This document shows, one piece after another, positions 17,759-62,792 of a stretch of 64,000 nucleotides of DNA. Each line of letters starts with the position of its first letter. The first letter of the stretch is position 1. Both the position numbers and the translations under genes were made by a program. The notes under the pieces are model-generated. The model saw only the letters and a program-made list of their open reading frames with translations. It was not told where the DNA came from and made no database searches. The stretch is taken from NCBI RefSeq assembly GCF_001447785.1, contig NW_015167085.1, positions 310,001 to 374,000 on the forward strand, in the 5' to 3' direction. Origin of the DNA: Gekko japonicus (lineage: Eukaryota).

Positions 17759-19557
17759 CACTCTAAGAGTTCCTGACATAAACCTGTGACAAGCCACACT
17801 GTTCAGGAATTGCATTTGCATTAGTGCATGCAGAAGGCCCTGAACATCCAGTTTACAGCTTGTTTTGTTGTTGTTGTTGTTCATTAAGGATGGACCCACA
17901 AAAAGATTCCTTGCCCAGTTTACAAGTGTTAAAATACTTGTGATTGTATGACTGAGGCCCATAGAGAATGTGTGTTTGTTTGCTTCATTTCTTGGTCTAC
18001 TTCTGTATTTTACCGAAAGTATCTTTGGAGGGGGAGGTGTTTTTTCTTCTGTTTTCTTAGGAAGTGAGATTACTCCGGATTTAGAGGAAGTAAATTTAGA
18101 TTTTGTTTGTTTCCAGTTATTCCACGTTTTGTGACACCAAAGCATTGGGGGGGGGGGAACTGACTGAAATCCTCTGAAGGGAATTTAGTATATTGAGGCG
18201 GAACTGTTCTGCCTATTTTGTAGAGGTGGGAAGGAAAAATTAAAGAGTGTTAGCCAAGTATTTGTATATGAGTTTGACAGAAGGAGCTTGGAGACTTTTT
18301 AGGAGATGTGGAGAATAGTTTGGAATGGTTACATCTCAGAAGTGATCTGTGCATTCGGTAAAAGCATGTAGAGTAACACCTCTGCAACGACTTTCTAATA
18401 CCTAATGGCAGTCACACATTCCGTTGCACTCATGCAAAAAATTTTCAGGAGTCCTCCATGAATATCAAAAACTAGATTGTAAGCTAGAAGACTGGACTTG
18501 GGCATATTAGATTTCCACAGAAAGGGATCTTTTGACATGCATATCCTTTGCCTGAATTCAAAATCCAGGAACCTCATACTGTATATTTCTTCTAAGTGTG
18601 GACCCAGCTTTATATTTATTTATTTATTTAAAACTTTTCTGTGCTACCTTTCCACCCAGGTAGGGTCCCAAGGTGGCGAAAAGCAGGACATAAGTGGTCA
18701 ACAGAAAGTTTCAAGAGCATTTACAGTTCTCTGTGCCTATGAAAACTTGAATTGTCTGAACAGCTATGCTTGCCTAAGAGCAGCTTGCCTGTGTACACTT
18801 TCAGGAAAATATTTTCATAAGCTAGGCTTGAAAACCTATTTTTAATTTGATCTTTAAGATTAATACATTAAATATATCTTCATATGTAAATAGCTCTCCC
18901 TACCTATCTCACCAAAACAAAAAGGTTGAGCTATTCATTTGTAATGGAAGGTCTTCCATTTGTCCAAATTGAGGAATTAAGGGGGGGAAAGGTGAGAGGT
19001 TTGGGTGGTGGTGGGGGAGTGGTTGTGAAGAATTCATCAGGTTGTTTAGACTAGAAGTCCATCAAGACAACCTCCAAAGGATTCTTCTGGGTGATTAGGT
19101 GATACTGACCATAGCAGATAAACAACAGGACTCAAATGTTAGAACATTTCATTTTTAACTATTTCACTTCCCTATTTTTCCATTTGTGATGAGTAAGTCT
19201 TCACACACAATAAAATAAAACAGCTTGACCAACATGTGTGTCTTCAGGTTTGTTTGTTTTTAAGTAATATCAAGCAAAGCAAAGGAAGCATAGTCCTTGG
19301 ATTCTGGCTTCAACGCTACACTATGATTACTTCCGTGCAGAATTTTGTTCTACTTTGTCATCTAAACTGAGAGGGATGTTTTGTTTTGTTTTTCGGAGCC
19401 TACGTACATCATCATCTCCTAGTTGTCCACTTCCTAGGCTTTGTCTTGTTTTACTATGATCTTTCCCAAATATCTTTTTTTGTGGAAAATCACAGTCAAA
19501 GCATATTTGCATAATGTATAGATGGGGAGGTACACATTTTTTATAAGGTTCTGTCAC

Positions 19558-19763
19558 CAGTGTTCCCTCTAAGCCGAATTAGTGTGAGCTAGCTCACAGT
19601 TTTTTAGCCTCTGGCTCACACATTTTTGTCTTAGCTCAGGAAGGATGACTCCAGAGCAAACTAATTTATGCAGTAGCCAAATTACCCGCTCACAACTTTA
19701 ATGCCAGTAGCTCACAAAGTAGAATTTTTGCTTATAAGACTCCACAGCTTAGAGGGAACATTA
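19558..19763. mobile_element. hAT MITE, inverted copy of 3250-3455
   Basis: CAGTGTTCCCTCTAAGC...AGCTTAGAGGGAACATTA; full-length reverse-complement match; TSD not retained. Confidence 0.88.
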
Positions 19764-19911
19764 TTTTTCTTGCTCCAGCCCCCCCCCCCCCACTGCCATT
19801 TTCACTGTGCATCATCTGAGGCCTTTCCATTGTTTTAGAAAAATCAATAATTGCTTGACTGCTATGGTATTACAACACTGAACATCCATTACCACAATCT
19901 ACTAGTTTGCT

Positions 19912-21630
19912 ACTTCTTCAGTTGGACCCAAGAACCAGATCTGTGAGCTGTACAGCATGCATGGTATCTCTATGGTATTATATGTCTTCAGGAGCGCTGG
20001 CACATACTGAGCTCCTTGAACGTAAAAATACCCCTCATTAAGGCTAGTAGGGCTAAATCAGTTTTCTGTTTAAGATATTGAATGTGCTTGGACCATGATA
20101 AATTTGTTTGATCATCTCGTCTTCATGAACAGCATAATTTTGGATTTGTCCTCATTTATCTCCAGTTATTCATTGTTACAGGAAGTGATAAATGTATTAA
20201 TAGCATGTTTTAGGCCAACTTGGGTTCTAGAAAGCAGGACAAGGTCATCAGCGTATAACAGCACAGGCTCTGGTCAACTTTCCAGACATGGTGCATGGGT
20301 GGGTATGTTTTGTAAGCCTGGCACAAAGTCATTTAAATAGAGTTTGTTTGAGGTTAATTTTGAAATTTAACTCCGGTTCAAGGTTGTACTTTCTGTAAAG
20401 ATTTTCAAAGTGCTTTTCCCAGCCTGTTGTTACTATGGGGGTTACACTTGCAACATTGCTGTGTGGCTTCAGTTTTGGGGTAATTAAGCGCCAGAGGGAT
20501 GCATTGGGTTTCCCTTTGGCGGTTACTATTCTCTTGTCCCATACAGATTTCATAGTCAGGTGCTTCTTTTTCTTCAGTATGTTTTTATATTTCTGCATTG
20601 CCAGCAATAATGAGTGTTGAGCAGTGATTGTATTGCTATATATTAAGAGTTTATAGTGTTGCTTAATTTGATTTTTGGCCATCCTTCAGTCTTTGTTGAA
20701 CCAGCGCTTTGTGTGATGACAGGATTTGCTTCATTTTCTTTTCCCTTTTCTATTGTTTAGAAAGACAGGTTCAAAAAGTTTGGTAAATGATGACATATTT
20801 TCTGGTGTGAGTGACAGTCCTGCTCTGTCAGGATTTTCTCTTTTAGCATTTGTACTTCCATGGTATGAAGTATTTTATAGCAGCTTCAGCCAATCTCTTA
20901 GACCACTTTTGTTTGGAGGTCAATACTTTGGGCCCAATCTGGCCAGTATTTAGACTTGGTATCGTTTTGGTTGACACTTTGATAGAAATGGGAAAATGGC
21001 CACTTGTTCTCTGGGCATGTACTTTGAACTCCAGTTCAGCATGCAATCAATAACTCTTGCTCCTTGCGGGGAAATAAAGGTGTAACCTCCAGAGGGTTCA
21101 ACAGTGCTATTTCCATTTATAATAGCTAATGAGAGTTTGCAGACCATGTTCATCAGTTTAACCCCTGATCTGTTGATGCCCTTATCTTTGGAGTGGCACA
21201 TTCCTTCTGTAGTGTTGTGGTACAAAACAATTTCCCTCCAAAGTTTAGAGAGGAACAGTTCATTGTCATTTGCACCAATTCTAGCATTGAAGTCTCCCCC
21301 CCCCCCCCATCATAACAGTTTGTGGATGGCTGCTTTGTAAATCTAATAGGGATTCTTCTAAAGTGGCCCGTTGTCTATCAGTGTCAGTTTTGGAGGTTCT
21401 AGGAGGGAGATAGACATTTACCAGGATGCATTCTTTGAGTTATCTTTACTGCCATAGCCAGATTTGTAGGGCAGGGGGGAAAGGAGATGGTTTGCCCAAA
21501 ACTGGAGATAAAACAAAGTAAACCACCTGGGGGGCATCCTTTTAGCTATTCTGTGGGCAGACAGAAGAACTATAGGTCATAAGAGCTGCAAAGCCAGGAT
21601 TCTTGTATCATGATACAGTCAAAAATCTCA
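19912..21630 (-). pseudogene. RTE-X-like LINE, inverted 5' part (APE endonuclease plus internally deleted RT)
   Basis: Minus-strand motifs FDCIMIQESW, ILVNVYLPP, GDFNARIG, YTFISPQGARVID, WEKHFENLY, LYLNDF, VLLYADDLVLLS, MLYSSQIW; frameshifts and stops present. Confidence 0.8.
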
Positions 21631-22007
21631 ACACTAATCTGGAAGGCTGTAGCCAGTTTCGAGTACGGTCTATCAAACTCCAAAGACCTTCCAACCTTCA
21701 TCACACTGGCAGCACGTGAACGTTGCTGGTCAAAATGGAATGAAGCCATAGATATGAAAATAAACCAACTGGGCTTACGGAAGCCAAAAAATCTAACCAA
21801 AAGATGGCAAACTTTATTTACAGAGGAGCTGATTAAACACGACTGGGACACTCTTCAAAAGGATGCCAGACGAAAATGCTCCCCACTTCATCTGGAAATT
21901 AAATAGTCTACCAAATTTGACCCGCCTCTTTATCTTAACGTGCTGACATTCCCCAGACTGAGGTGGTCATATATGATTGCATGCTGTAATGCCTTTCCAA
22001 CAACCTA

Positions 22008-22692
22008 GTGGGAGAGGTGGCGCAGACTGCTTTAACAACTATGAACAGCCATTGTGGCTGTTCGAGAACCACCGCGGCCGGGGTGAGCGCCCGGCCCTAG
22101 TCCCAGCTTCCGCCCACCCAGCGGGTCAAAAGCAGTTAACAACCAAGCGAGTAGACGAATGGGGACCTACCCTTAGATGGGTAGGGGGCACCCTCCTCTG
22201 ACGAGGTGTGTGGAGACGGCACAGACGGCGGCAAAACATCGGTGGCGGCGGAGCTTCTGGTGGTGAAGGCAGATGGCGGCTGCAGCGGCGACAGAACGAT
22301 CCCTGGTGGCTAGCAGACCATCGTGCAGTCGACGACGGCAAAGGCGGAGACTGGGAGACGCCCGATGACGCGCAACGCAGGGCGCGGTGGAGCCTGAATC
22401 GGACAGAGCCGAGGTCAAGAAGCGGGGGGGAGTCGTGCGCCTGCACGGTCTCGCCAACAACAATCGTCCTGCAAAAATGCCAAGAGATCGCCTGGAAGAA
22501 AGCCACGCTGGAGCAACCAACAAGGCTCTCCACCTGGGTGCTGATAGGCTACCCCACCCCTATCATGTGGCCCAAGTCAGGGATTAAGGGTTATTAGAGC
22601 CACTATATATGTAAACCACCCAGAGACCCTCCGGGGTTAGGGCGGTATAGCAAGTTGAAAGTATAAATAAATAAATAAATAAATAAATAAAA
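22008..22692 (+). mobile_element. CpG-rich non-autonomous retroposon with an L2-type 3' tail
   Basis: Splits the RTE-X CNAFPT/KGRF motif; ends GTAAACCACCCAGAG...GGGCGGTATA...(TAAA)n. Confidence 0.6.
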
Positions 22693-22927
22693 TGAAGGGC
22701 CGTTTTCTCGCAACACCTTCAGACCAGTGCTATTGTGATTGCTGTCTGAAAGAACTTGACTCACTATCTCACGTTTTCTTCTATTTTCCAACACATGCAG
22801 CAGCAAGAACGAAATTCCTTAGGAAATGGATGCTGAAGTATTCAACCTTTTCTGATACTACAAGCCTAAGGTTGCGTTCAGACTGGCAGTTTGGCCCAAT
22901 ATAGGCACATTTTACAAATTGATTAAA

Positions 22928-23400
22928 TGGGCCCAGTCACACAGCTACATCTGTCAGGCATTCCCTGGGTGTACTCACCCCATCAGAGGATGACTTGGAG
23001 CCGGGTTAAAAAGCCACCACCTCCGAAGTGCTGTTTTTGTTTCCCCATGCATTCATTGCGCGGGGCTGGATGTCTGAACACAAGGGAGCACACGCTGAAC
23101 GGATTTGGTAGTCTGAACCTGCAGATCCGTTCTGCTAGGGAGGCAGGGTTTTTTTTAATTGCCTATATGTGCATGTGCACGCATGCGCACTATGTGCGCA
23201 CATGGATTTCGGATTTTTTTTTTTGCAGTTTGCTATGTGGTTGAGGCGCCACAATAATGTGGATGCTTTATTATGAGATGTCTCCATGGGTAACCCACAG
23301 CAGGGTGTGCTGTGTGGCTGATATATCCCACTGCATTTTAACCCAGTTCAATTAGAGGCAGCACCATATCGTGCCAAGCTGCCAGTGTGATCACAGCCCA
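22928..23400. mobile_element. Older foldback MITE related to 9519-9977, nested in the RTE-X 3' region
   Basis: Ends TGGGCCCAGTCACAC / GTGTGATCACAGCCCA; central GTGCATGTGCAC..GTGCGCACATG. Confidence 0.5.
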
Positions 23401-23690
23401 TGACTACTCTTAAGCAGTCTCTGCAAAAACTGTATAGTAGACATGGCAAATTTCTGTTTTACTGTGTTTTTAAACTCTTAAATTTTCTTTACGGTGCATG
23501 GCCATTGGGCTAATAAGTCTAAATAAACTTGACTAGTTTGCTGAATCCTCAGTTTTCATTTTTTAAAGTAATTTTCTAGACCTTTCCAGTGTGGAGATAC
23601 TTCTGCAGCAAAAAAGGGTAGAGACTTTGTAATGGAAGGTGGGAATTCAAAGCAACCTCTATATCATTGCAATAGAGCTTTATAATACTA

Positions 23691-26249
23691 CTAGCAGTAA
23701 AGCCCGTTGTGAAAGCAATACAACGGGATCTAGAAAGAGGCTCTGGGGCAGTGCTCTGGCTTTGGGCAAACAGTGTCAATTTGCTGTGGTGACCTCAGCA
23801 GGGTATAATGACAGAGTCCACTGTTTTCTCCAGAGGAACTGATCTCTGCTACCTGAAGAGCAGTTGTAATTGTGAGTAATCTGTAGCCCTCACCTGGAGA
23901 TTGGCAACAATTGTTACCCAGGACGAAATGGCTGGTTTGGAGGACGGAGTCTATGGCATTCTACCTGTCTGAGGTCCCACCCCTCTGCAAATCCCACCCT
24001 CTCCAGGCTCCACCCCTCAAATCCCCAGGAATTTGTTAGCATGTAGTTGGCAACCCCATCTCCTTCCCAGCTAGCCATCAACCTACCATTATCTGCCCCT
24101 TTGACTTCAGCTGACTTCTGCCCTCCCTTCTGCAGAGCAGTTGTAATACTGAGTGCTCTCCAGCCCTCACCTGGAGATTGGCAACAATGGTTCCCTATGT
24201 GGGACTGACTGGTTTGGAGGGTAGAGTCTATGGCAGTGTACCTGTCTGAGGTCCCACCCCTCCTCAAACCTCACCCTCTTCAGGCTCCATCCCTCAAGTC
24301 TCCAGGAATTTCCCATCTGGAGTTGGCAACCCTATCAGGATTGGCCCCAATGTGTTTTCTCCCAAAGGCCAAAGTAGGTGACAGGACCAAGCTTAGTTGC
24401 CTACCAACAGGCACTGAGGGGAATGTAGGGTTGCCAGCTCTAAGGAGGGAAATACCTGGAGGTTTTGGGGGTGGATTCTGTAGAGGGACGGGCAACGGAG
24501 GCATCGGCCTTCCGTCCCCCACCTCGCCCCCCCAATCTCGGCCCGGGCGACCGTGGCTCCCGCCATCGGCTGGCCAACTCCAGACCCCCCCGCAGCCACT
24601 CCAGCCAGGCGANNNNNNNNNNNNNNNNNNNNNNNNNNNNNNNNNNNNNNNNNNNNNNNNNNNNNNNNNNNNNNNNNNNNNNNNNNNNNNNNNNNNNNNN
24701 NNNNNNNNNNNNNNNNNNNNNNNNNNNNNNNNNNNNNNNNNNNNNNNNNNNNNNNNNNNNNNNNNNNNNNNNNNNNNNNNNNNNNNNNNNNNNNNNNNNN
24801 NNNNNNNNNNNNNNNNNNNNNNNNNNNNNNNNNNNNNNNNNNNNNNNNNNNNNNNNNNNNNNNNNNNNNNNNNNNNNNNNNNNNNNNNNNNNNNNNNNNN
24901 NNNNNNNNNNNNNNNNNNNNNNNNNNNNNNNNNNNNNNNNNNNNNNNNNNNNNNNNNNNNNNNNNNNNNNNNNNNNNNNNNNNNNNNNNNNNNNNNNNNN
25001 NNNNNNNNNNNNNNNNNNNNNNNNNNNNNNNNNNNNNNNNNNNNNNNNNNNNNNNNNNNNNNNNNNNNNNNNNNNNNNNNNNNNNNNNNNNNNNNNNNNN
25101 NNNNCAGGGCCGACATCCAGCCGCAGGGTCCGTTTCCCCCCACCCAACCCCACTCACTCCAGGGCCGGCGACTGGAGGTGCAAGCCTCCGGCTGCCGGGT
25201 CCGTTTCCACCCTCCCCCACTCCAGGACCGGAGACAGGAGGCAGAAGCCTCCGGTCGCCCACTCCCTTCCCCTCCCCCACCACCCACTCCCAACAGGCAC
25301 TGAGGGGAATGTAGGGTTGCCAGCTCTAAGGAGGGAAATACCTGGAGGTTTGGGGGGTGGATTCTGTAGAGGGCAGCATTGGGCGGGGGGGGGGCGGAAG
25401 GACTCAGCAGGTATAATGTCATAGGGTCTACCCTCCTAAAGCAGTCATTTTCTCTAGGGGAACTGATCTCTGTCATCTGGAGATCAATTGTAGCAGTGGG
25501 AGATCTCCAGGTCCCACCTGGAGATTGGCAACCCTAGGGGGAAGTCAGCTGCACAGCAGGGGGTTGAAGAGAATGGTTTGATGGCTGCTGGGCCAAGATT
25601 GGCAACAATAGTTCCCCAGGAGCCCCATCGTAAATGCACCAAACAATTCCTCAAGATTTTCCAAAACACTTCTCTGTTTTGGGCTCCTGGGGAACTTTGA
25701 AGTAGCACCAAAGCTTTAAGATCTCTCCAGCTGTCACCTGGAGACTGGCAACAGCTTGTCTGGAGTGTGGGCAGCATGGCATTGTATCTGTCTGAGGTCC
25801 CCCTCTTCCTCCTCCTCCTCAGATCCCACCCTCAGCAGGCTTCATCCCTAAAATATCCTGGAAGTTTCCAACCTGGAGTTGGCAACCCTATGTCCTGGAG
25901 TTCCAACCTGGAGTTGGCAACCATCAGCCAACCTTTATCTGCCTCTCTGTCTTTACAAAAAAAACCCCCCCCACACACACAGCCTCTGCCTAGGGAGCAG
26001 CTGACATCATTCTCCTCTCCCAACTGAAAATTCCAACTGCCTTGGGGGGGGGGGTGAGTTTGAGGTGTGGAATGGAGTGTAGTCCAATCAGCTTCCATAT
26101 GTAAATGACCTTGGAACACTGGCCGGGACTGCACAAAGCAGCCAATGAACCCAGCCAGTGTCTTCCGAGTGGCAGTTTTTTCAGCCTAACACTAAAGGGG
26201 CCAATTTTAGAACTTTGGCACCCACTATTCTTTTATTATAAGGGAGAGA
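23691..26249 (-). mobile_element. Non-autonomous Helitron (copy B) carrying captured hAT-MITE and SINE fragments and a GC-rich minisatellite
   Basis: Minus strand starts A|TCTCTCCCTTATAATAAAAG; perfect 8-bp stem CCCGTTGT/ACAACGGG (23703-23727) lies 8 nt from the terminal CTAG|T; AT target. Confidence 0.8.
24613..25104. other. Assembly gap inside a GC-rich repeat
   Basis: Run of N. Confidence 1.
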
Positions 26250-28390: not shown

Positions 28391-31300
28391 GTTGTTGTTG
28401 TTGTTCAGTCGCACAGTCGAGTCCGACTCTTCGCGACCCCATGGATCATCTTCCGCCAGGCCCTCCTGTCTTCCGCCGTCCTCTGAAGTTGGCTCAATTT
28501 CATGTTTGTTGCATCGATGACACTGTCTAACCATCTCATCCTTTGCCGTCCCCGTCTTCTTTGACCTTCAATCTTTCCCAGCATCAGGGTCTTCTCCAGT
28601 GAGTGCTCCCTTCTCATTTGGTGGCCAAAGTATTTGAGCTTCAGTTTCATTATCTGGCCTTCCAGGGAACAGTCAGGGTTGATTTCTTTTAGGACTGACT
28701 GATTTGATTTTTTTGCAGTCCAAGGGACTCTCAAAAGTCTTCTCCAGCACCATAGTTCAAAAGAATCTATTCTTCGGCTCTCGGCCTTCCTTATAGTCCA
28801 ACTCTTGCAGCCATACATGACTACTGGGAATACCATTGCTTTGACCATGCGGACTTTTGTTGGCAGGGTGATGTCTCTACTTTTTATCATGCTGTTTAGG
28901 TTCGCCATCGCTTTCCTCCCAAGGAGCAGGCGTCTTTTAATTTCATGGCTGCAGTCACAGTCTGCGGTGATCTGGGATCCCAGGAACGTGAAGTCTGTCA
29001 CTACTTCCACGACTTCCCCTTCTATTTGCCAAGGAGTGATGGGGCCGGATGCCATGATCTTAGTTTTTTTGATGTTGAGCTTCAAGCCCACTTTTGCGCT
29101 CTCCTCTTTTACCCTGAGCAAGAGGCTCTTGAGGTCCTCTTCACTTTCTGCCATCAGAGTGGTATCGTCTGCATATCTGAGGTTGTTGATCTTTTCCCCA
29201 GCAATCTTAATTCCCGCTTGTGATTCATCCAGGCCAGCATTTCGCATGATGTACTCTGCATATATATTAAATAAGCAAGGTGACAGTATACATCCTTGTC
29301 GTACTCCTTTTCCTATGCTGAACCAATCAGTTGTTCCATATCCGGTTCTAACTGTCGCTTCTTGGCCCTTATACAGGTTTCTCAAGAGACATGTGAGGTG
29401 GTCTGGTACTCCCATCTCTTTAAGGACCTGCCATAGTTTGTTGTGATCCACACAGTCAAAAGCTTTAGCATAGTCAATGAAGCAGAAGTAGATATTTTTC
29501 TGGTACTCTCTTGCTTTCTCCATAATCCAGCGAATGTTGGAAATTTGATCTCTAGTTCCTCTACCTCTTCGAAACCCAGCTTGTACTTCTGGTAGTTCTC
29601 TATCCACGTACTGTTGAAGCCTAGCTTGTAGGATCTTGAGCATGACCTTGCTAGCGTGTGATATGAGTGCAATTGTGCGATAGTTTGAACATTCCTTGGC
29701 ATTGCCCTTCTTTGGGATTGGAATGTATACTGATCTTTTCCAATCCTGTGGCCACTGTTGCGTTTTCCAAATTTGCTGGCAAATGGAGTGCAGCACTTTA
29801 ACAGCATCATCTTCTAAGACTTTGAATAGCTCAGCTGGAATACCATCACCTCCACTAGCTTTGTTGTTAGCAATGCTTTCTAAGGCCCATTTAACTTCAC
29901 ATTCCAGGATGTCTGGCTCGAGGTCAGTGATTATACCGTCGTGGTTGTCAAGGACATCGAGGTCTTTCTTGTATAGTTCTTCTGTGTATTCTTGCCATCT
30001 TTTCCTAATCTCTTCTGCTTCTGTTAGGTCCCTACCGTTTTTGTCCTTTATCATGGCCAGCTTTGCATGGAACGCTCCCTTGATTTCTCCAATTTTCTTG
30101 AAGAGATCTCTAGTCCTTCCCATTCTATTGTTTTCTTCTATTACTTTGCACTGTTCATTCAGGAAGGCCTCCTTATCTCTCCTTGCTGTTCTCTGGAAAT
30201 CTGCGTTCAGTTGGGTAAATCTTTCCTTTTCGCCTTTGCCTTTCGCTTTCCTTCTTTCCTCTGCTATTTGTAAAGCCTCATCAGAAAGCCACTTTGCTTT
30301 CTTACATTTCTTTTTCTTTGGGATGGTGGTGATTGCTGCCTCCTGTACGATGTCACGAACCTCTGTCCATAGTTCTTCAGGCACTCTATCTATCAAATCC
30401 AGACCCTTGAATCTATTCTTCACCTCTACTGTATATTCATCAGGGATGCGATCTAGGTCAAACCTGAATGGCCTCGTGGTTTTCCCGATTTTCTTCAGTT
30501 TAAGTCTGAATTTTGCAATGAGTAGCTCATGATCTGAACCACAGTCAGCTCCAGGTCTTGTTTTTACTGACTGGATAGAGCTTCTCCATCTTTGACTGCA
30601 AATTATATAGTCAATCTGATTTCGGTGTTGCCCATCTGGTGATGTCCATGTGTAGAGTCGCCTCTTAGGTTGTTGGAAAAGGGTGTTCGCTATGACCAGT
30701 GTGTTCTCTTGACAAAACTCTGTTAACCTTTGCCCTGCTTCATTTTGCTTTCCAAGGCCAAACTTGTCTGTTATTCCAGTTACCTTTTGACTTCCTACTT
30801 TAGCATTCCAGTCCCCTATGATGATGAGGACATCATTTTTTGGTGTTAGTTCTAGGAGGTGTTGTAGGTCTTCATAGAACCGGTCCACTTCAGCCTCTTC
30901 TGCATCAGTGGTTGGGGCATAGACTTGGATTACTGTGATGTTGAATGGTTTGCCTTGGAATCGGACAGAAATCATTCTGTCATTTTTGAGATTGTATCCC
31001 AGTACTGCCTTTTGCACTCTCTTGTTGACTATAAAGGCCACACCATTTTTTCTACGAGATTCCTGGCCACAGTAGTAGATATAATGGTCTTCTGAGTTAA
31101 ATTCGCCCATTCCTGTCCACTTTAGTTCACTGATTCCTAGGATATCGATGTTCAGTCTTGCCATCTCATTTTTGACCACGTCAAGCTTACCTTGATTCAT
31201 AGATCTTACATTCCAGGTTCCTATGTAGTATTGTTCTTTGCAGCATTGGACTTTCCTTTCACCATCAGACACATCCACAACTGAGCGTCCTTTCGGCTTT

Positions 31301-31614
31301 GGCCCAGCCGCTTCACTCTTTCTGGGGTTACTTGTACTTGTCCTCTGCTCTTCCTCAGTAGCATATTGGACACCTTCCGACCTGAGGGGCTCATCTTCCG
31401 GCGTCATATCTTTTAGCCTTTTGATACTGTCCATGGGGTTTTCTTGGCAAAAATACTGGAGTGGGTTGCCATTTCCTTCTCCAGGTGGATCACGCTTGGT
31501 CTGAGTTCTCTGCTGTGGCCTGTCCGTCTTGGGTGGCCCTTCACGGCATAGCCCACAGCTTCATTGAACTGCACAAGCCCCCTCGCCACGACAAGGCAGT
31601 GATCCATGAGGGGG
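28391..31614 (-). mobile_element. Full-length RTE-BovB LINE
   Basis: 5' end CCCCCTCATGGATCACTGCCTTGTCGTGG, shared with the second copy; BovB-type GGAGAAGGAAATGGCAACCCACTCCAGTAT; (CAA)n 3' tail. Confidence 0.97.
28405..31434 (-). CDS. BovB ORF, APE endonuclease plus reverse transcriptase, 1009 aa, uninterrupted
   Basis: GTWNVRS, ISELKW, QVYAPT, GDWNAKVG, QIDYI, SDHELL; NYRTIALIS, QAGFR, FIDYAKAFD, GVRQGCILSP, LRYADD. Confidence 0.96.
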   Translation of the reverse strand: MDSIKRLKDMTPEDEPLRSEGVQYATEEEQRTSTSNPRKSEAAGPKPKGRSVVDVSDGERKVQCCKEQYYIGTWNVRSMNQGKLDVVKNEMARLNIDILGISELKWTGMGEFNSEDHYIYYCGQESRRKNGVAFIVNKRVQKAVLGYNLKNDRMISVRFQGKPFNITVIQVYAPTTDAEEAEVDRFYEDLQHLLELTPKNDVLIIIGDWNAKVGSQKVTGITDKFGLGKQNEAGQRLTEFCQENTLVIANTLFQQPKRRLYTWTSPDGQHRNQIDYIICSQRWRSSIQSVKTRPGADCGSDHELLIAKFRLKLKKIGKTTRPFRFDLDRIPDEYTVEVKNRFKGLDLIDRVPEELWTEVRDIVQEAAITTIPKKKKCKKAKWLSDEALQIAEERRKAKGKGEKERFTQLNADFQRTARRDKEAFLNEQCKVIEENNRMGRTRDLFKKIGEIKGAFHAKLAMIKDKNGRDLTEAEEIRKRWQEYTEELYKKDLDVLDNHDGIITDLEPDILECEVKWALESIANNKASGGDGIPAELFKVLEDDAVKVLHSICQQIWKTQQWPQDWKRSVYIPIPKKGNAKECSNYRTIALISHASKVMLKILQARLQQYVDRELPEVQAGFRRGRGTRDQISNIRWIMEKAREYQKNIYFCFIDYAKAFDCVDHNKLWQVLKEMGVPDHLTCLLRNLYKGQEATVRTGYGTTDWFSIGKGVRQGCILSPCLFNIYAEYIMRNAGLDESQAGIKIAGEKINNLRYADDTTLMAESEEDLKSLLLRVKEESAKVGLKLNIKKTKIMASGPITPWQIEGEVVEVVTDFTFLGSQITADCDCSHEIKRRLLLGRKAMANLNSMIKSRDITLPTKVRMVKAMVFPVVMYGCKSWTIRKAESRRIDSFELWCWRRLLRVPWTAKKSNQSVLKEINPDCSLEGQIMKLKLKYFGHQMRREHSLEKTLMLGKIEGQRRRGRQRMRWLDSVIDATNMKLSQLQRTAEDRRAWRKMIHGVAKSRTRLCD

Positions 31615-56749: not shown

Positions 56750-59700
56750 CCAGAGTAAGCTGCAAGATGTGCCTAGGCTGGGGAAGCCCGTTGCGATGGG
56801 GAGGTGGGAGGTATGGTGGTGAGGGGACTGTTAGGTTTAGAAGGAGATTGAGGTATGGACATGCTCGGTCCCCTTCTAACCTCCCTCCCATCCCAAGGAA
56901 TGATGATGTGCAGACCTAAATTTCTTTGCCCTCCTCTTCAGGCTTCACGTTGTGCAGTGTCAGATTGATTATGAATAAGACTGCCTCCCTTAAAGGATTT
57001 ATTAGAAAAGGCGATTTTGATTTTGCATGCTTGACTGAGATCTGGGTGGACGAGGATGAACTGGTGGTTCGTACTCAACTGACTCCCCCAGGATACTTGG
57101 TCCTTCGTCAACCGTGAACAGGAAAACAGAGAGGGTGGGCATCCCCATCCGAGAGTCTTTCTACTTCAAATGGCTTCCTGCATCAAATATTGCTGTCAAT
57201 GAATGTGTAGGCCTGGCATGGAGTTCCAGGGAGAGGGTGGGAGTCTGGCTGGTTTACCGTCTGCCCAGCTTACCAGCTGACTCCCTGCTGAGGCTGGCTG
57301 AGGCGGTGGTGGAGTGGGCCTTGTGCTTCCCCCAAATGATAGTTTTGGGGGACTTCAATGTCCACGCTGACACTGCCTTGTCTGGTGCCTCCTTAGACTT
57401 TATGACTGCCATGGCATCCATTAGGAATCTCCCAGGTTGTATCAATCCCCATGCACAGGGCAGGCCACACACTGGATCTGATCTTTAGTGCAGGAATTGA
57501 TCTGGACTGATCTTTACCTTGTGAAGGTCAGTTTGAGATTTTCCTTCTCCTTCTACAGGGGCGGTGAGCTTATTTACACTCACCCACGGAGACTCATGGA
57601 TCCAGTTGGATTCCAGAACGCTCTGTAGGATTGGTCTGGCTCTGCTGGCTGCTCTCTTGATGAGTTCACTGATGCCTGGAATCTGGGCCTTCAGGAGGCC
57701 ATTGACCAAGTTGCCCCCCCCCCCCCAGTGCCCTCTTCACCCCCATACTAACTGGCGTCCCAGGTATACGGATGAACTAAGGAGGTAAAAAGGGGGCTTA
57801 GGTAGCTAGAATGGTGCTGGCAATGAACTCGTAATAAAGCAATGAAGCACTTTCTAGAGCCTGATTGAAGGCCTATGAAGTGGCAGTGAAGGCAGCAAAG
57901 CATTTTTACTTCTCTGCCTCCGTTGCATCTGCTGCGTCATACCCAGCTCATTTGTTTAGAGTTATTAGGCAATTGACCACCCCCTCAGTGGCTCCAAAAG
58001 TAGATGAAAATTTGGCTACTAGCTGTGACAAATTTGCTACATTCTTTTCAGAAAAAGTCTCGCTCTTTCACCTGCCAGATTGTGAGTCAGTAGGAACCTT
58101 GGAGCCCTGGGTGCACAATCAGGTCCATTTTTTGACACTTTCAGCCCACTCTCCCAGGTGGAGGTTGACAGGGTCCTATTGACTGTGCGACGTACTACCT
58201 GCTTCTTGGATCCCTACCCTTCCTGGCTGGTGAAAGCCTCCAGGGAAATGGTAGAAGAACCCTTAGCAGACATTATAAATCTATCACTCTCCCAGGGCTC
58301 TTTCCTAGCAGACATTATAAATCTATCACTCTCCCAGGGCTGTTTCCCTAGCTCCCTAAAGGAGGCAGTGGTGACACCCCTCCTGAAAAAGTCACTGTTA
58401 GATGAGAGGGACTTAACCAATTACCACCCAGTATCTACTCTTCTACCTCTGGGAAAGGTGATTGAGTGAGCAGCGGATGAGCAGCTCCAGGAATTCCTGG
58501 ATGAGACATCTGCCTGAGAGCCCTTCCAATCCAGCTTCTGGCTGGGGTTTGGGACTGAGACAGCTCTGAACTGCTTTTGACACAGTGGACCATTTGGTCC
58601 TGGTCAACCGCCTGGCCTCCCTGGGTGTGAGGTATACGGCCTTGAGCTGGTTCTTCTCATTCCTCCAGGGTCTGCCCCAGAGGGTAATCGTGGGTGGAGC
58701 AATGTCGTCACCATAGGCCCTAACCTGTGGAGTTCCGCAGGGGGTCGATTCTCTAACCAATGTTAATTAATATCTGAAGACGCCCTCTGGCAGAGATGTG
58801 TCAGGAGGTTTGGAGTGGAGTGCCATTAATATGCAGATGACACCCAGCTCTACCTCTTATTTAAGGAGCAACTGGTAGCTGGAATTCTGGTCTTGGCCTC
58901 CTGCCTGGATGCAGTGGTGGAATGGCTAGGTGAGAGTTTGTTGAGGCTAAATCCATCTAAGACAGAGATTACATGGCTAGGGAAGCCCGGACCACTGGGG
59001 TGTCTTTCTACGGTCGACTCTGTCAGGAATTTGAGAGTATAGTTTGATTCTTTGTTCTCCATGGACAAACATGTGTCCTCAGTTACAAAGTTTGCATTTT
59101 ACCATCCATGCCAGGCCTACCAGTTGGCTCTTTATCTGTCTCAGGATGACTTTGCCATGGTAATTCAGTCAACAGTCACCTCTATGCAGGGCTACCTTTG
59201 GAAACTACAAAGTGGTCCAGAACACAGCTGCCAGATTGCTGACAGGAGTGTCCTGGTCAGCACATAGAACACCTGTCCTATGGCAGCTGCACTTTCCCCC
59301 AGTTAGTTTCTGGTGTCAATTCAAAGTGTTGGTACCAACCTTTAAGCTCTCAATGGCCTGGGACCATCATACCTTCAGGATGACTTCCCCTGGCATGATC
59401 CTCCCCATGTTCTCCAATCTTCATCTCAGCATTTATTGGTCCCTGGTCCACAAACCATCCATCTTGTGTCAACAAGGTCAAGGTTCTCTCATATTAGCTG
59501 CTGTAGTAGCGGCCCCTGTCCTGTGGAACCAGCTGCCCGAAGGGGTGCATGCCTTGCGTACCTCCCTAAGTTCCACAGACCATGCAAGGCTGCTCTTTTT
59601 GGGGTGGCGTTTGGGTGGTTGTGGTCCAACAGGCCGTTGGTATGCTTCAGCTGTGACTTCACCGTCCACACATCCTACCCTGCTTGATAGTGGATAGATT

Positions 59701-61358: not shown

Positions 61359-61491
61359 AAAAGTTTGATTCTTGCAACAAACAATTAATGGCATCAACTT
61401 TTATTTAAAAAGTAAAACTGTTTACATTGCGCCTAAAAATGACCTGGAAGGAAGCTGGGTGTGCAACTATAACACAAGGAAGTGCAGAGTT

Positions 61492-62792
61492 AGGAATTTT
61501 GTTAGGAATTTTGGCTCCAATGTGCATCACTTTGCACTTGGCCACATTGAAGCCCATTTGCCACGTTGACGCCCACTCACTCATCCTTGACAGATCCCTT
61601 TGGAGTGCCTGACAATCCTCTGTGGTTCTCACCACCATGAACAACTTCGTATCATCCGCAAATTTAGCCACTTCACTGCTTACTCCCAACTCCAAATCAT
61701 TAATAAACAATTTAAAAAACATCGGACTGAGTACTGATCCCTGTGGTACCCCACTGCTTACCACCCTCCACTGAGAAAATTTACCATTTATACACTCTGT
61801 TTCCTATTAATTAGCCAGTTTTTGATCCACAAGAGGACTTGTCCTTTTATCCCACGACTATTGAGCCTACTTAGGAGCCTTTCATGAGGAACTTTATCAA
61901 AAGCTTTCTGGAAGTCAAGGTAAACAACATCTATTGGGTCCCCCTTGTCCACATGTTTGTTCACTCCCTCAAAAAACACTTAATAGGTTAGTGAGACAGG
62001 ATTGTCCCTTACAGAACCCATGCTGAGTCGGCCTCAATAGTTTTTGTTCATCAATGTGCCTACCAATTCTTTCCTTAATAACAGTTTCCACCAGCTTACC
62101 CAGTATTAACGTCAGACTGACTGGCCTGTAATTTCCCAGATCGCTTCTGGAACTCTTTTTAAAGATGGGAGTGACATTAGCTACCTTCCAGTCCTCAGGA
62201 ATGGAGGCAGATTTTAATGAAATATTACATATTTTTGTCAGGAGATCCACAAGTTCACATTTTAGTTCTTTCAGAACTCTCGGATATATGCCATCCAGGC
62301 CTGGTGATTTATCAGTTTTTAAGTTGTCTATCGAGACACGGGTGCCGCATGACGGAGTGAGCTCCCGTCGCTAGTTCCAGCTCCTGCCAACCTAGCAGTT
62401 CGAAAGCAAGAAATTGCAAGTAGATCAATAGGTACCGCTTCGGTGGGAAGGTAACAGCGTTCCGTGCACCTTGGTGTTTAGTCATGCCGGCCACATGACC
62501 ACGGAAACATCTTCAGACAGCGCTGGCTCTTCGGCTTGGAAATGGAGATGAGCACTGCAACCCTAGAGTCAGATTTGACTGGCTTTCGAGCAAGGGAACC
62601 TTTACCTTTAAGTTGTCTATCAGTCGTAGGACCTCCTCTCTCGCCACCTCAATCTGACTCAGTTCTTTCAACATTCCTCCCAAAATCAGCGGTTCTGGAG
62701 TGGGCAAGCACTTCTCATCTTCCACAGTGAAGACAGAGGCAAAAAATGCATTCAGCTTCTCAGCCATTTCCCTATCATCCTTGAGTACTCCT
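61492..62792 (-). mobile_element. CR1 LINE internal (RT) fragment, interrupted by a Sauria SINE
   Basis: AEKLNAFFASVF, IPEDWKVANVTPIFKK, NYRPVSLT, YLDFQKAFDKVPH, SGVPQGSVL, KFADDTKL, WQMGFNVAKCKVMHIG. Confidence 0.93.
62333..62609 (+). mobile_element. Sauria SINE, 5'-truncated, inserted in CR1
   Basis: Sauria core and ACCTTT tail; 15-bp TSD TTTAAGTTGTCTATC at 62318-62332 and 62607-62621. Confidence 0.92.

What the first reader, a model, noticed from the sequence alone, without database searches (positions are those of the whole stretch)
19901..23542. RTE-X-like LINE with a twin-priming-type 5' inversion inside a single TSD
Seen: APE+RT lie on the minus strand with their C-terminal end at the outer left edge and the N-terminus at the junction (~21620-21640). 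The remaining C-terminus and 3' tail continue on the plus strand. An 11-bp direct repeat ACTAGTTTGCT brackets the whole structure, and the inversion breakpoint falls exactly at the left repeat. Known: this geometry is the twin-priming product described for mammalian L1 and has been regarded as largely L1-specific. Inference: a non-L1 clade in a reptile can also prime internally from the second nick.
Basis: partly seen in the sequence, partly recalled or inferred. Interest (0 to 1): 0.8.

Follow-up and report, generated by a model that had tools for sequence, protein, structure and literature searches.

The report
5'-inverted non-L1 LINE in one duplication
An old, decayed copy of a lizard-type jumping gene (a non-L1 LINE) sits with its front three quarters flipped relative to its tail inside one 11-base target duplication, the signature of "twin priming", which has so far been documented almost only for mammalian L1.

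Summary
ACTAGTTTGCT occurs exactly twice in the window, at 19901-19911 and 23532-23542. Between the two copies lies one degraded APE+RT LINE.

- **Inverted part:** codons ~33-868 (numbering of relative P0034) read on the minus strand from ~21620 down to 19912.
- **Direct part:** codons ~900-1113 and a short A/T-rich 3' end without poly(A) read on the plus strand from ~21622-21641 to 23531.
- **Missing at the breakpoint:** only ~28-35 codons.
a ~0.7 kb deletion inside RT and two later nested insertions (22003-22691 and 22870-23398).

The element is not L1. Its relatives are single-ORF squamate LINEs from Anolis, Podarcis and Rhineura. They match human L1 ORF2p only in RT (92 bits) and match a BovB copy in this window at 24% identity. 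The label "RTE-X" could not be tested.

Contigs from an independent sample bridge the inner junction. A related species shares the right junction, so the insertion is old.

Twin-priming-like formation in a single insertion event is the best explanation (about 0.75). Microhomology, the empty site and genome-wide frequency remain untested.

Published work already records one non-L1 (Nimb-2_DR) 5' inversion. First readers of this scan flagged four similar RTE/BovB or SINE cases elsewhere in this genome; none has been checked.

The parts
19901..19911 (+). Left copy of the target-site duplication ACTAGTTTGCT
   Evidence: Exact match, one of only two in the window. It abuts the end of LINE homology.
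19912..20345 (-). Inverted segment, part 1: second half of RT (YADD motif at ~20250) and thumb region. Its 3'-most point (b) lies at 19912-19929, about codon 866-868 of P0034.
   Evidence: Profile 665-826 maps to 20345-19929 with E down to 6e-12. tblastn of P0034 residues 701-857 and of many relatives. Weak Pfam RVT_1 hit on one piece.
20346..20376 (-). Site of an internal deletion of about 235 codons (~0.7 kb) that removes RT domains 0-4
   Evidence: Profile positions 430-664 are absent, with only ~31 nt between the flanking matches. P0034 residues 458-700 are unmatched.
20377..20679 (-). Inverted segment, part 2: linker between APE and RT
   Evidence: Profile 330-429, E 1e-14.
20885..21620 (-). 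Inverted segment, part 3: apurinic-type endonuclease (GDFNAR motif at ~21290; DCIMIQESW motif at 21620-21594). Its 5'-most point (a) is about codon 30-34.
   Evidence: Profile 29-262, E down to 9e-21. Relatives found by phmmer with 20953-21309. P0003 residue 55 aligns at 21620.
21621..21641 (.). Zone that contains the inversion junction. Both readings are possible here, and it lies beside the 14-bp palindrome at 21604-21617.
   Evidence: The APE motif ends at 21620. Plus-strand homology and paralogous contigs start by 21635-21641. X1 record 3 bridges 21298-21803.
21622..22002 (+). Direct segment, part 1: C-terminal region following RT (about P0034 residues 900-1019)
   Evidence: Profile 861-919 and 957-986. 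Pairwise z-scores 4.3 and 3.7. 15-25-fold read depth, as for the RT part.
22003..22691 (+). Nested later insertion: a GC-rich retroposon with an (AAAT)n tail. It is not part of the LINE.
   Evidence: It splits profile 986/989. Depth is about 1000-fold in its head. Its body has zero depth in species B and C.
22692..22869 (+). Direct segment, part 2: Cys/His motif region (CxC...H....C degraded) of the ORF C-terminus
   Evidence: Profile 989-1047, E 5e-9. P0034 residues 1022-1071, z 11.2.
22870..23398 (.). Nested later insertion: MITE-like element with 33-nt terminal inverted repeats. It is not part of the LINE.
   Evidence: Inverted repeat I1, 79% complementary. About 300-fold depth. It splits profile 1047/1049.
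23399..23531 (+). Direct segment, part 3: end of the ORF and a short A/T-rich 3' UTR (18-50 nt, depending on frame) with no poly(A)
   Evidence: Sequence. Weak colinear profile match 1049-1070. Contigs from samples X1 and X3 run through 23531/23532 (records 8 and 16).
23532..23542 (+). Right copy of the target-site duplication ACTAGTTTGCT
   Evidence: Exact match.

Best explanation
One retrotransposition event of a non-L1, single-ORF APE-RT LINE of a squamate lineage produced a 5'-inverted copy by a twin-priming-type reaction.

**Inferred steps**
1. The element's endonuclease nicked the bottom strand. Reverse transcription started at the RNA's 3' end and produced the direct segment, from the 3' end back to about codon 900.
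2. The top strand was nicked 11 nt away. The freed 3' overhang annealed inside the same RNA at about codon 868 and primed a second cDNA, which ran almost to the start of the ORF (about codon 33).
3. Joining of the two cDNA ends placed the 5' three quarters of the element in reverse orientation, next to the left copy of the 11-bp duplication. About 85-105 nt between the two priming products were lost.

**Later events**
- The copy decayed through many frameshifts and stops.
- It lost ~0.7 kb of RT.
- It received two nested insertions.

**Shown versus inferred**
- Shown: the geometry, the single duplication, the colinearity of the halves, their common family, and the non-L1 identity.
- Inferred from structure: the two priming events and the way the ends were joined.
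For: - **Target duplication:** an exact 11-bp repeat sits at both homology boundaries and occurs nowhere else in the window.
- **Mapping of the halves:** the minus strand covers profile 29-826 and the plus strand covers 861-1070 of one 1081-position profile built from 15 relatives. The parts are in order on each strand. Ten or more separate full-length proteins give the same split.
- **Small gap:** only ~28-35 codons are missing between the outer end of the inverted part and the inner start of the direct part.
- **No 3' end on the inverted part:** target-primed insertion cannot produce this on its own.
- **Composition:** both halves share the same sense-strand bias (A 31-34%, G 18%).
- **Copy number:** RT and C-terminal parts have similar copy depth, 11-25-fold.
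- **Independent support for the assembly:** sample X1 differs from the window by about 2%, and its contig bridges the inner junction. Contigs from X1 and from related species B bridge the right junction.
- **Not L1:** the relatives match L1 ORF2p only in RT (92 bits, against 76 bits for R2). The APE part gives no significant L1-EN hit. There is no poly(A).
- **TSD properties:** 11 bp starting with A fits published RTE-clade TSDs, which are most often 10-12 bp with A at the first position in anole RTE (PMC6007223). It also meets the 10 nt or longer overhang thought necessary for second priming (PMC4245944).
Against: - No family consensus could be obtained, so breakpoints are known only at protein level from relatives ~30-40% identical.
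- Microhomology between the TSD's 3' end and the internal priming site is untested.
- No empty site was seen, and the left junction was not shown bridged by an independent contig.
- An 11/11 perfect TSD is somewhat lucky for so decayed a copy.
- Similarity continues beyond the 11-mer (19/23), which blurs the left breakpoint.
- This is a single case.
Confidence: 0.75

Rival explanations
1. An ordinary, nearly full-length insertion flanked by the 11-bp duplication was later rearranged. A genomic inversion of its 5' three quarters, with loss of about 90 nt, happened to have one breakpoint at the 5' junction.
For: This gives the same final geometry. The copy is old and has suffered other rearrangements: the 0.7 kb RT deletion and two nested insertions. 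A 14-bp palindrome lies beside the inner junction.
Against: One inversion breakpoint would have to fall within 0-17 nt of the element/TSD boundary in a 3.6 kb structure. No inverted repeats that could drive such an inversion were found at the two breakpoints. The palindrome lies inside a conserved APE motif and is only 7+7 nt.
Confidence: 0.1
2. This was a single insertion event but not twin priming in the strict sense. Examples are template switching of the reverse transcriptase, or end-joining capture of two cDNA pieces made from one RNA, without priming from the second nick.
For: The structure alone cannot distinguish how the inverted cDNA was primed. Microhomology was not testable, and ~85-105 nt are missing at the breakpoint.
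Against: The inverted segment is attached directly to the 3' end of the left TSD copy, which is where the second-nick primer ends. This is the specific prediction of twin priming, and no filler DNA is seen there.
Confidence: 0.1
3. Two independent copies of the same family inserted head to head, and the 11-bp repeat is a coincidence.
For: LINE-rich regions do accumulate nested and adjacent copies. This window holds BovB and CR1-like copies too.
Against: - The minus-strand piece lacks its own 3' end, which target-primed insertions always keep.
- The two pieces are complementary in coverage to within ~30 codons.
- An exact 11-mer at both outer boundaries has a chance probability below 1e-3.
- No second pair of TSDs is present.
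Confidence: 0.04

Closest known systems
Twin-primed 5'-inverted L1 insertions of mammals (Ostertag and Kazazian 2001; cited in PMC4245944)
   Same: One TSD around the whole insert. The 5' part is inverted and attached to the upstream TSD copy. The 3' part is direct and carries the element's 3' end. There is a small loss at the inversion point. TSD length falls in the 10-20 bp range reported for L1 inversions.
   Different: The element is not L1. It has no poly(A) tail, so first-strand priming cannot rely on A/T pairing. The target is not a TTTT/A-type site. The host is a squamate.
The single Nimb-2_DR 5' inversion recovered in chicken DT40 cells (Yamaguchi et al. 2014, PMC4245944)
   Same: A non-L1 vertebrate LINE with TSDs of about 12 bp gave a 5' inversion. 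This supports the idea that overhang length, not clade, is what matters.
   Different: That was one event in a cell-culture assay with a fish I-group element. This is a fixed genomic copy of a different, RTE-like lineage in a reptile.
RTE-group LINEs of squamates (RTE1, RTEX, BovB; Anolis clade lists in PMC5389967 and PMC7561263)
   Same: Single ORF with APE and RT. Inferred element size of about 3.5-3.9 kb. Very short A/T-rich 3' UTR without poly(A). An 11-bp TSD starting with A. 24% identity over APE to RT with the BovB ORF at 28405-31434.
   Different: Relatives carry a C-terminal CxC-x9-H-x4-C motif. From memory, I do not associate this motif with BovB, and the BovB ORF in this window does not align beyond RT. 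No phylogeny with named references was possible, so Vingi or another clade is not excluded.

Membership tests
Twin-priming-type 5'-inverted LINE insertion | A single target-site duplication brackets the whole inverted-plus-direct structure | tested here: met
   Exact 11-mer at 19901-19911 and 23532-23542 only. Chance probability 0.11% or less.
Twin-priming-type 5'-inverted LINE insertion | The inverted segment's 3'-most point abuts the upstream TSD copy, and the direct segment keeps the element's 3' end at the downstream TSD copy | tested here: met
   RT thumb reads into 19912-19929. ORF end and 3' UTR end at 23531.
Twin-priming-type 5'-inverted LINE insertion | Both segments come from one element and are adjacent in it, with only a small deletion or duplication at the breakpoint | tested here: met
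   Profile positions up to ~832 map on the minus strand and from ~861 on the plus strand of the same profile. This is protein-level resolution only.
Twin-priming-type 5'-inverted LINE insertion | Microhomology between the 3' end of the target overhang and the internal priming site, and at the inversion junction | not testable with these tools
   No family consensus DNA was available. There is no other copy in the window. The read laying tables were filled by high-copy repeats.
Twin-priming-type 5'-inverted LINE insertion | The empty site holds one copy of the duplicated 11-mer | not tested
   Related species B carries the filled right junction (record 16). No species without the insertion was available.
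L1 clade | ORF2-type protein similar to L1 ORF2p through endonuclease, RT and C-terminal domain | tested here: not met
   P0034 matches L1 ORF2p only in RT (92 bits; R2 gives 76 bits). The APE-bearing relative P0003 gives only E 0.54 to an L1 endonuclease chain.
L1 clade | Poly(A) or A-rich tail at the 3' end | tested here: not met
   The sequence ends ...TAAATAAACTTG directly before the TSD.
RTE-X (RTEX) clade | RT-domain phylogeny groups it with RTEX reference elements (RTclass1/Repbase) | not testable with these tools
   No named RTEX, RTE1 or Vingi references were retrievable. Relatives are unnamed squamate proteins.
RTE group in the broad sense | Single APE-RT ORF, very short A/T-rich 3' UTR without poly(A), and TSDs mostly 10-12 bp | tested here: met
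   Pfam domains of relatives. 3' end. 11-bp TSD set against the published range. These features are typical of the group, not exclusive to it.
RTE group in the broad sense | Closer in sequence to a bona fide RTE (BovB) than to other clades | tested here: inconclusive
   157 bits and 24% identity to the BovB-type ORF of this window over APE to RT, against 92 bits to L1. No other clades were compared on equal terms.

The most novel reading that the evidence does not exclude
Twin priming is not an L1 peculiarity. It is a general outcome of target-primed reverse transcription whenever the second nick leaves an overhang of about 10 nt or more. RTE-type LINEs of squamates, and perhaps the SINEs they mobilise, would then produce 5'-inverted copies recurrently. 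This copy would be one of several in this genome, since first readers of the scan flagged four more that remain unchecked.
Probability: 0.4. Interest if true: 0.65.

Novelty: new variant of a known kind. Interest (0 to 1): 0.5.

Why it matters
5' inversions are used as a hallmark of L1 biology, and their near-absence from other LINEs in cell assays has been read as dependence on L1-specific and host-specific factors (PMC4245944). That paper predicts that overhang length governs second-strand priming. A natural, TSD-bounded inverted copy of a non-L1 element with an 11-bp TSD supports that prediction directly.

It also indicates that a reverse transcriptase which recognises its own 3' end, rather than a poly(A) tail, can still start on an internal site from a DNA primer. 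If the pattern is recurrent, squamate RTE-type families would give a second natural system for dissecting 5'-end resolution.

Tried and rejected
- **Pfam on stop-free pieces:** only one weak RVT_1 hit. The pieces are too short and decayed.
- **blastn of the region against the window:** no second copy.
- **Word search with the 107-aa plus-strand piece:** nothing.
- **The look-up of encoding contigs:** The DNA of intact relatives, with their 3' ends and TSDs, could not be read.
- **Read laying:** I included the very high-copy repeats at 19452-19819 and beyond 23684. As a result, the joints and loose-ends tables showed only those repeats.
- **ESM Atlas:** only generic 'APE/RT hypothetical protein' clusters.
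- **Rfam and tRNA scans of 19300-24400:** empty.
- **Literature:** Novick 2009 and the Vingi paper are not held, and one literature query timed out.

**Readings rejected**
- That the 'CIMIQ' reading on both strands marks a real overlap. It is caused by a 14-bp palindrome inside the APE motif.
- L2 or CR1 identity. Relatives have GVRQGC and YADD rather than the PQGS and FADDT seen in the CR1-like copy at 61408-62370. The assignment of those motifs to clades rests on my own knowledge.
Full report
**Observation.** The word ACTAGTTTGCT occurs exactly twice in the 64 kb window, at 19901-19911 and 23532-23542. The only other matches carry a mismatch and lie elsewhere. The bases on either side of the two copies differ, so the perfect repeat is 11 nt. 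A looser similarity continues for 12 more bases, giving 19/23 overall (D6). In 19,478 random pairs of 40-bp windows at the same spacing, a shared exact word of 11 or more was found in 0.11%. That is before requiring the word to sit exactly on both boundaries of LINE homology.

**What lies between the repeats.** Six-frame reading shows endonuclease and RT motifs on the minus strand: GDFNAR near 21290, DCIMIQESW at 21620-21594, and YADD near 20250. A Cys/His motif region lies on the plus strand near 22730. Pfam on the short stop-free pieces gave only a weak RVT_1 hit.
- A phmmer search with the 119-aa endonuclease piece found relatives of 35-45% identity.
- These include full-length APE-RT proteins P0034 (1113 aa, Logan), P0006/P0061 (Anolis carolinensis), P0019 (Podarcis muralis) and P0003 (Rhineura floridana).
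- A second search from P0061 added a further set of 1000-1190-aa relatives.

**Mapping of the two halves.** I built a profile of 15 full-length relatives (1081 positions) and searched all stop-free pieces of 19500-24000.
- Minus strand, in order:
  - 29-66 at 21542-21432
  - 69-113 at 21433-21299
  - 112-199 at 21300-21037 (E 9e-21)
  - 209-262 at 21034-20885
  - 330-429 at 20679-20377 (E 1e-14)
  - 665-686, 691-723 (E 6e-12), 725-740, 767-792 and 793-826 (E 7e-8), running from 20345 down to 19929
- The open frame continues to 19905, inside the left repeat.
- Plus strand, in order:
  - 861-919 at 21616-21798 (E 1e-3)
  - 957-986 at 21913-22002 (E 0.01)
  - 989-1047 at 22692-22868 (E 5e-9)
  - a weak 1049-1070 at 23404-23469
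- Pairwise alignments with shuffling controls agree: P0034 1022-1071 z 11.2, P0006 871-939 z 4.3, P0019 858-879 z 3.7.
- tblastn with ten or more separate relatives gives the same strand split.

Thus the inverted part spans about codons 33-868 of P0034, minus an internal gap. The direct part spans about codons 900-1113. Only ~28-35 codons (85-105 nt) are missing between them.

The inner junction lies between 21621 and 21641. The APE motif ends at 21620. Plus-strand homology and paralogous contigs begin by 21635-21641. Both strands appear to read 'CIMIQ' there because of a 14-bp perfect palindrome (21604-21617) inside the APE motif.

- Profile positions 430-664 (RT domains 0-4, ~0.7 kb) are absent, with only ~31 nt between the flanking matches at 20346-20376.
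- A GC-rich retroposon with an (AAAT)n tail occupies ~22003-22691 and splits profile 986/989.
- A MITE-like element with 33-nt terminal inverted repeats occupies 22870-23398 and splits profile 1047/1049 (I1).
- After removal of these, the plus-strand LINE part is only ~690 nt. It ends in a short A/T-rich 3' UTR (18-50 nt, depending on which frame is real) without poly(A).

**Same family, and not L1.**
- Both halves hit the same proteins.
- In sense orientation they have the same base bias: A 34/31%, G 18/18%.
- In raw reads of the same species laid at 80% identity or more, the RT part (11-14-fold) and the C-terminal part (15-25-fold) have similar copy depth. The endonuclease part is near single copy.
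- P0034 matches human L1 ORF2p only across RT (92 bits), hardly better than R2 proteins (76 bits), with no endonuclease or C-terminal match.
- The endonuclease-bearing relative P0003 gives only E 0.54 to an L1 endonuclease chain.
- The window itself holds an intact 1009-aa ORF with BovB-type motifs at 28405-31434. P0034 aligns to it from endonuclease through RT at 24% identity and 157 bits.
- Relatives have Exo_endo_phos and RVT_1 domains and nothing else in Pfam. They carry a C-terminal CxC-x9-H-x4-C motif.
- In Anolis, only the RTE group among APE-bearing clades is 3.2-3.9 kb long (PMC5389967), which fits a ~1110-aa single ORF.
- RTE1, RTEX and Vingi all exist in anoles (PMC7561263), and no named references were available. 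The clade therefore stays open, and 'RTE-X-like' is neither confirmed nor refuted.
- The TSD fits published RTE-clade values: 11 bp starting with A, against a published range most often 10-12 bp with A at the first position in anole RTE (PMC6007223).

**Independent sequence support and age.**
- Sample X1 has the same species label and differs from the window by about 2% in a 968-nt contig, so it is not the assembly source.
- One X1 contig covers 21298-21803 and bridges the inner junction. Another runs through the right junction (23461-23690).
- A contig of related species B covers 23374-23690 at 95% identity. That stretch contains the end of the MITE, the LINE 3' end, the right repeat and the flank.
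- Depth over the near-single-copy endonuclease part is flank-like in species B and C.
- The LINE insertion and the MITE therefore predate the split from species B, and no empty site was available.
- The body of the nested retroposon (22212-22579) has zero depth in B and C, so that insertion may be younger.
- No displayed contig bridges the left junction.

**Mechanism.** The structure is what twin priming predicts.
- The cDNA primed from the second (top-strand) nick is attached to the 3' end of the left TSD copy and runs from an internal point towards the RNA's 5' end.
- The cDNA primed from the first nick carries the 3' end.
- A short stretch between the two is lost.

The rivals are weaker.
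- **Two independent head-to-head insertions.** These cannot explain a minus-strand piece without its own 3' end, the near-perfect complementarity of coverage, or the boundary-exact 11-mer.
- **A later genomic inversion.** This would need a breakpoint within 0-17 nt of the element/TSD boundary, and no driving inverted repeats are present.
- **A single-event alternative without second-nick priming** (template switch or capture). This cannot be excluded, because microhomology could not be examined.

**Comparison with what is known.** Yamaguchi et al. 2014 (PMC4245944) analysed more than 200 de novo inserts of L1, ZfL2-1 and Nimb-2_DR.
- L1 inversions had TSDs of 10-20 bp.
- The authors proposed that a ~5-nt overhang (ZfL2-1) is too short for second priming.

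The present copy has an 11-bp TSD and so fits that model outside L1. My literature searches found no genomic survey of 5' inversions in RTE-type or other non-L1 LINEs.

First readers of this scan flagged four similar cases elsewhere in this genome (s1-824392, s1-815364, s1-835347, s1-833111). None has been followed up. They are leads, not support.

**Limits.**
- Breakpoints rest on relatives only 30-40% identical to a decayed copy.
- No nucleotide consensus, no empty site and no genome-wide count were obtained.
- My single read-laying run was swamped by flanking high-copy repeats.

**Verdict.**

| Item | Assessment |
|---|---|
| Observation | confirmed |
| Best explanation | single-event, twin-priming-type 5' inversion of a non-L1 (RTE-like) LINE |
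| Confidence | about 0.75 |
| Novelty | a new variant of a known kind |
| Interest | 0.5 |

Noticed in passing
window 28405-31434 (-): Uninterrupted 1009-aa ORF with endonuclease and RT and BovB-type motifs. It looks like an intact RTE-BovB copy.
   Followed up: partly
window 61408-62370 (-) and 58086-58466 (+): CR1/L2-type RT fragments (GVPQGS, FADDTKL motifs).
   Followed up: no
window 19558-19762: A ~205-bp repeat 150 bp left of the finding, with 20,000-30,000-fold read depth in the same species. It is also very abundant in related species B and C and has sharp ends at 19556-19558 and 19757-19762. It looks like a very high-copy SINE.
   Followed up: no
window 22003-22691: Nested retroposon with an (AAAT)n tail. 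Its head (22028-22211) is about 1000-fold in all three species. Its GC-rich body (22212-22579) is 25-40-fold in this species and has zero depth in B and C. This suggests a lineage-specific composite SINE, as in scan note s1-816719.
   Followed up: partly
window 22870-23398: MITE-like element with 33-nt terminal inverted repeats at about 300-fold depth. Its right end is present at the orthologous place in species B.
   Followed up: partly
window 21604-21617: 14-bp perfect palindrome TGTATCATGATACA directly beside the inversion junction, inside the conserved endonuclease motif. It makes both strands read 'CIMIQ'. This is probably chance, but its position is striking.
   Followed up: partly
window 20346-20376: About 0.7 kb of RT (domains 0-4) is missing from the inverted segment. 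It is unknown whether this is a later deletion or was already present in the source RNA as an internally deleted, non-autonomous derivative.
   Followed up: no
window 19901-19923 vs 23532-23554: Similarity continues past the 11-mer to 19 of 23 bases (D6). The duplication could be longer and decayed, or the extra 8/12 matches could be chance.
   Followed up: partly
window 21296-21308: Run of 13 C (G on the coding strand) inside the endonuclease just before GDFNAR, giving a 'GGGG' stretch. Relatives have no such run at that place. It is probably a slippage expansion.
   Followed up: no
The Helitron may be absent in those samples, or the tool may have cut the alignment at a repeat.
   Followed up: no
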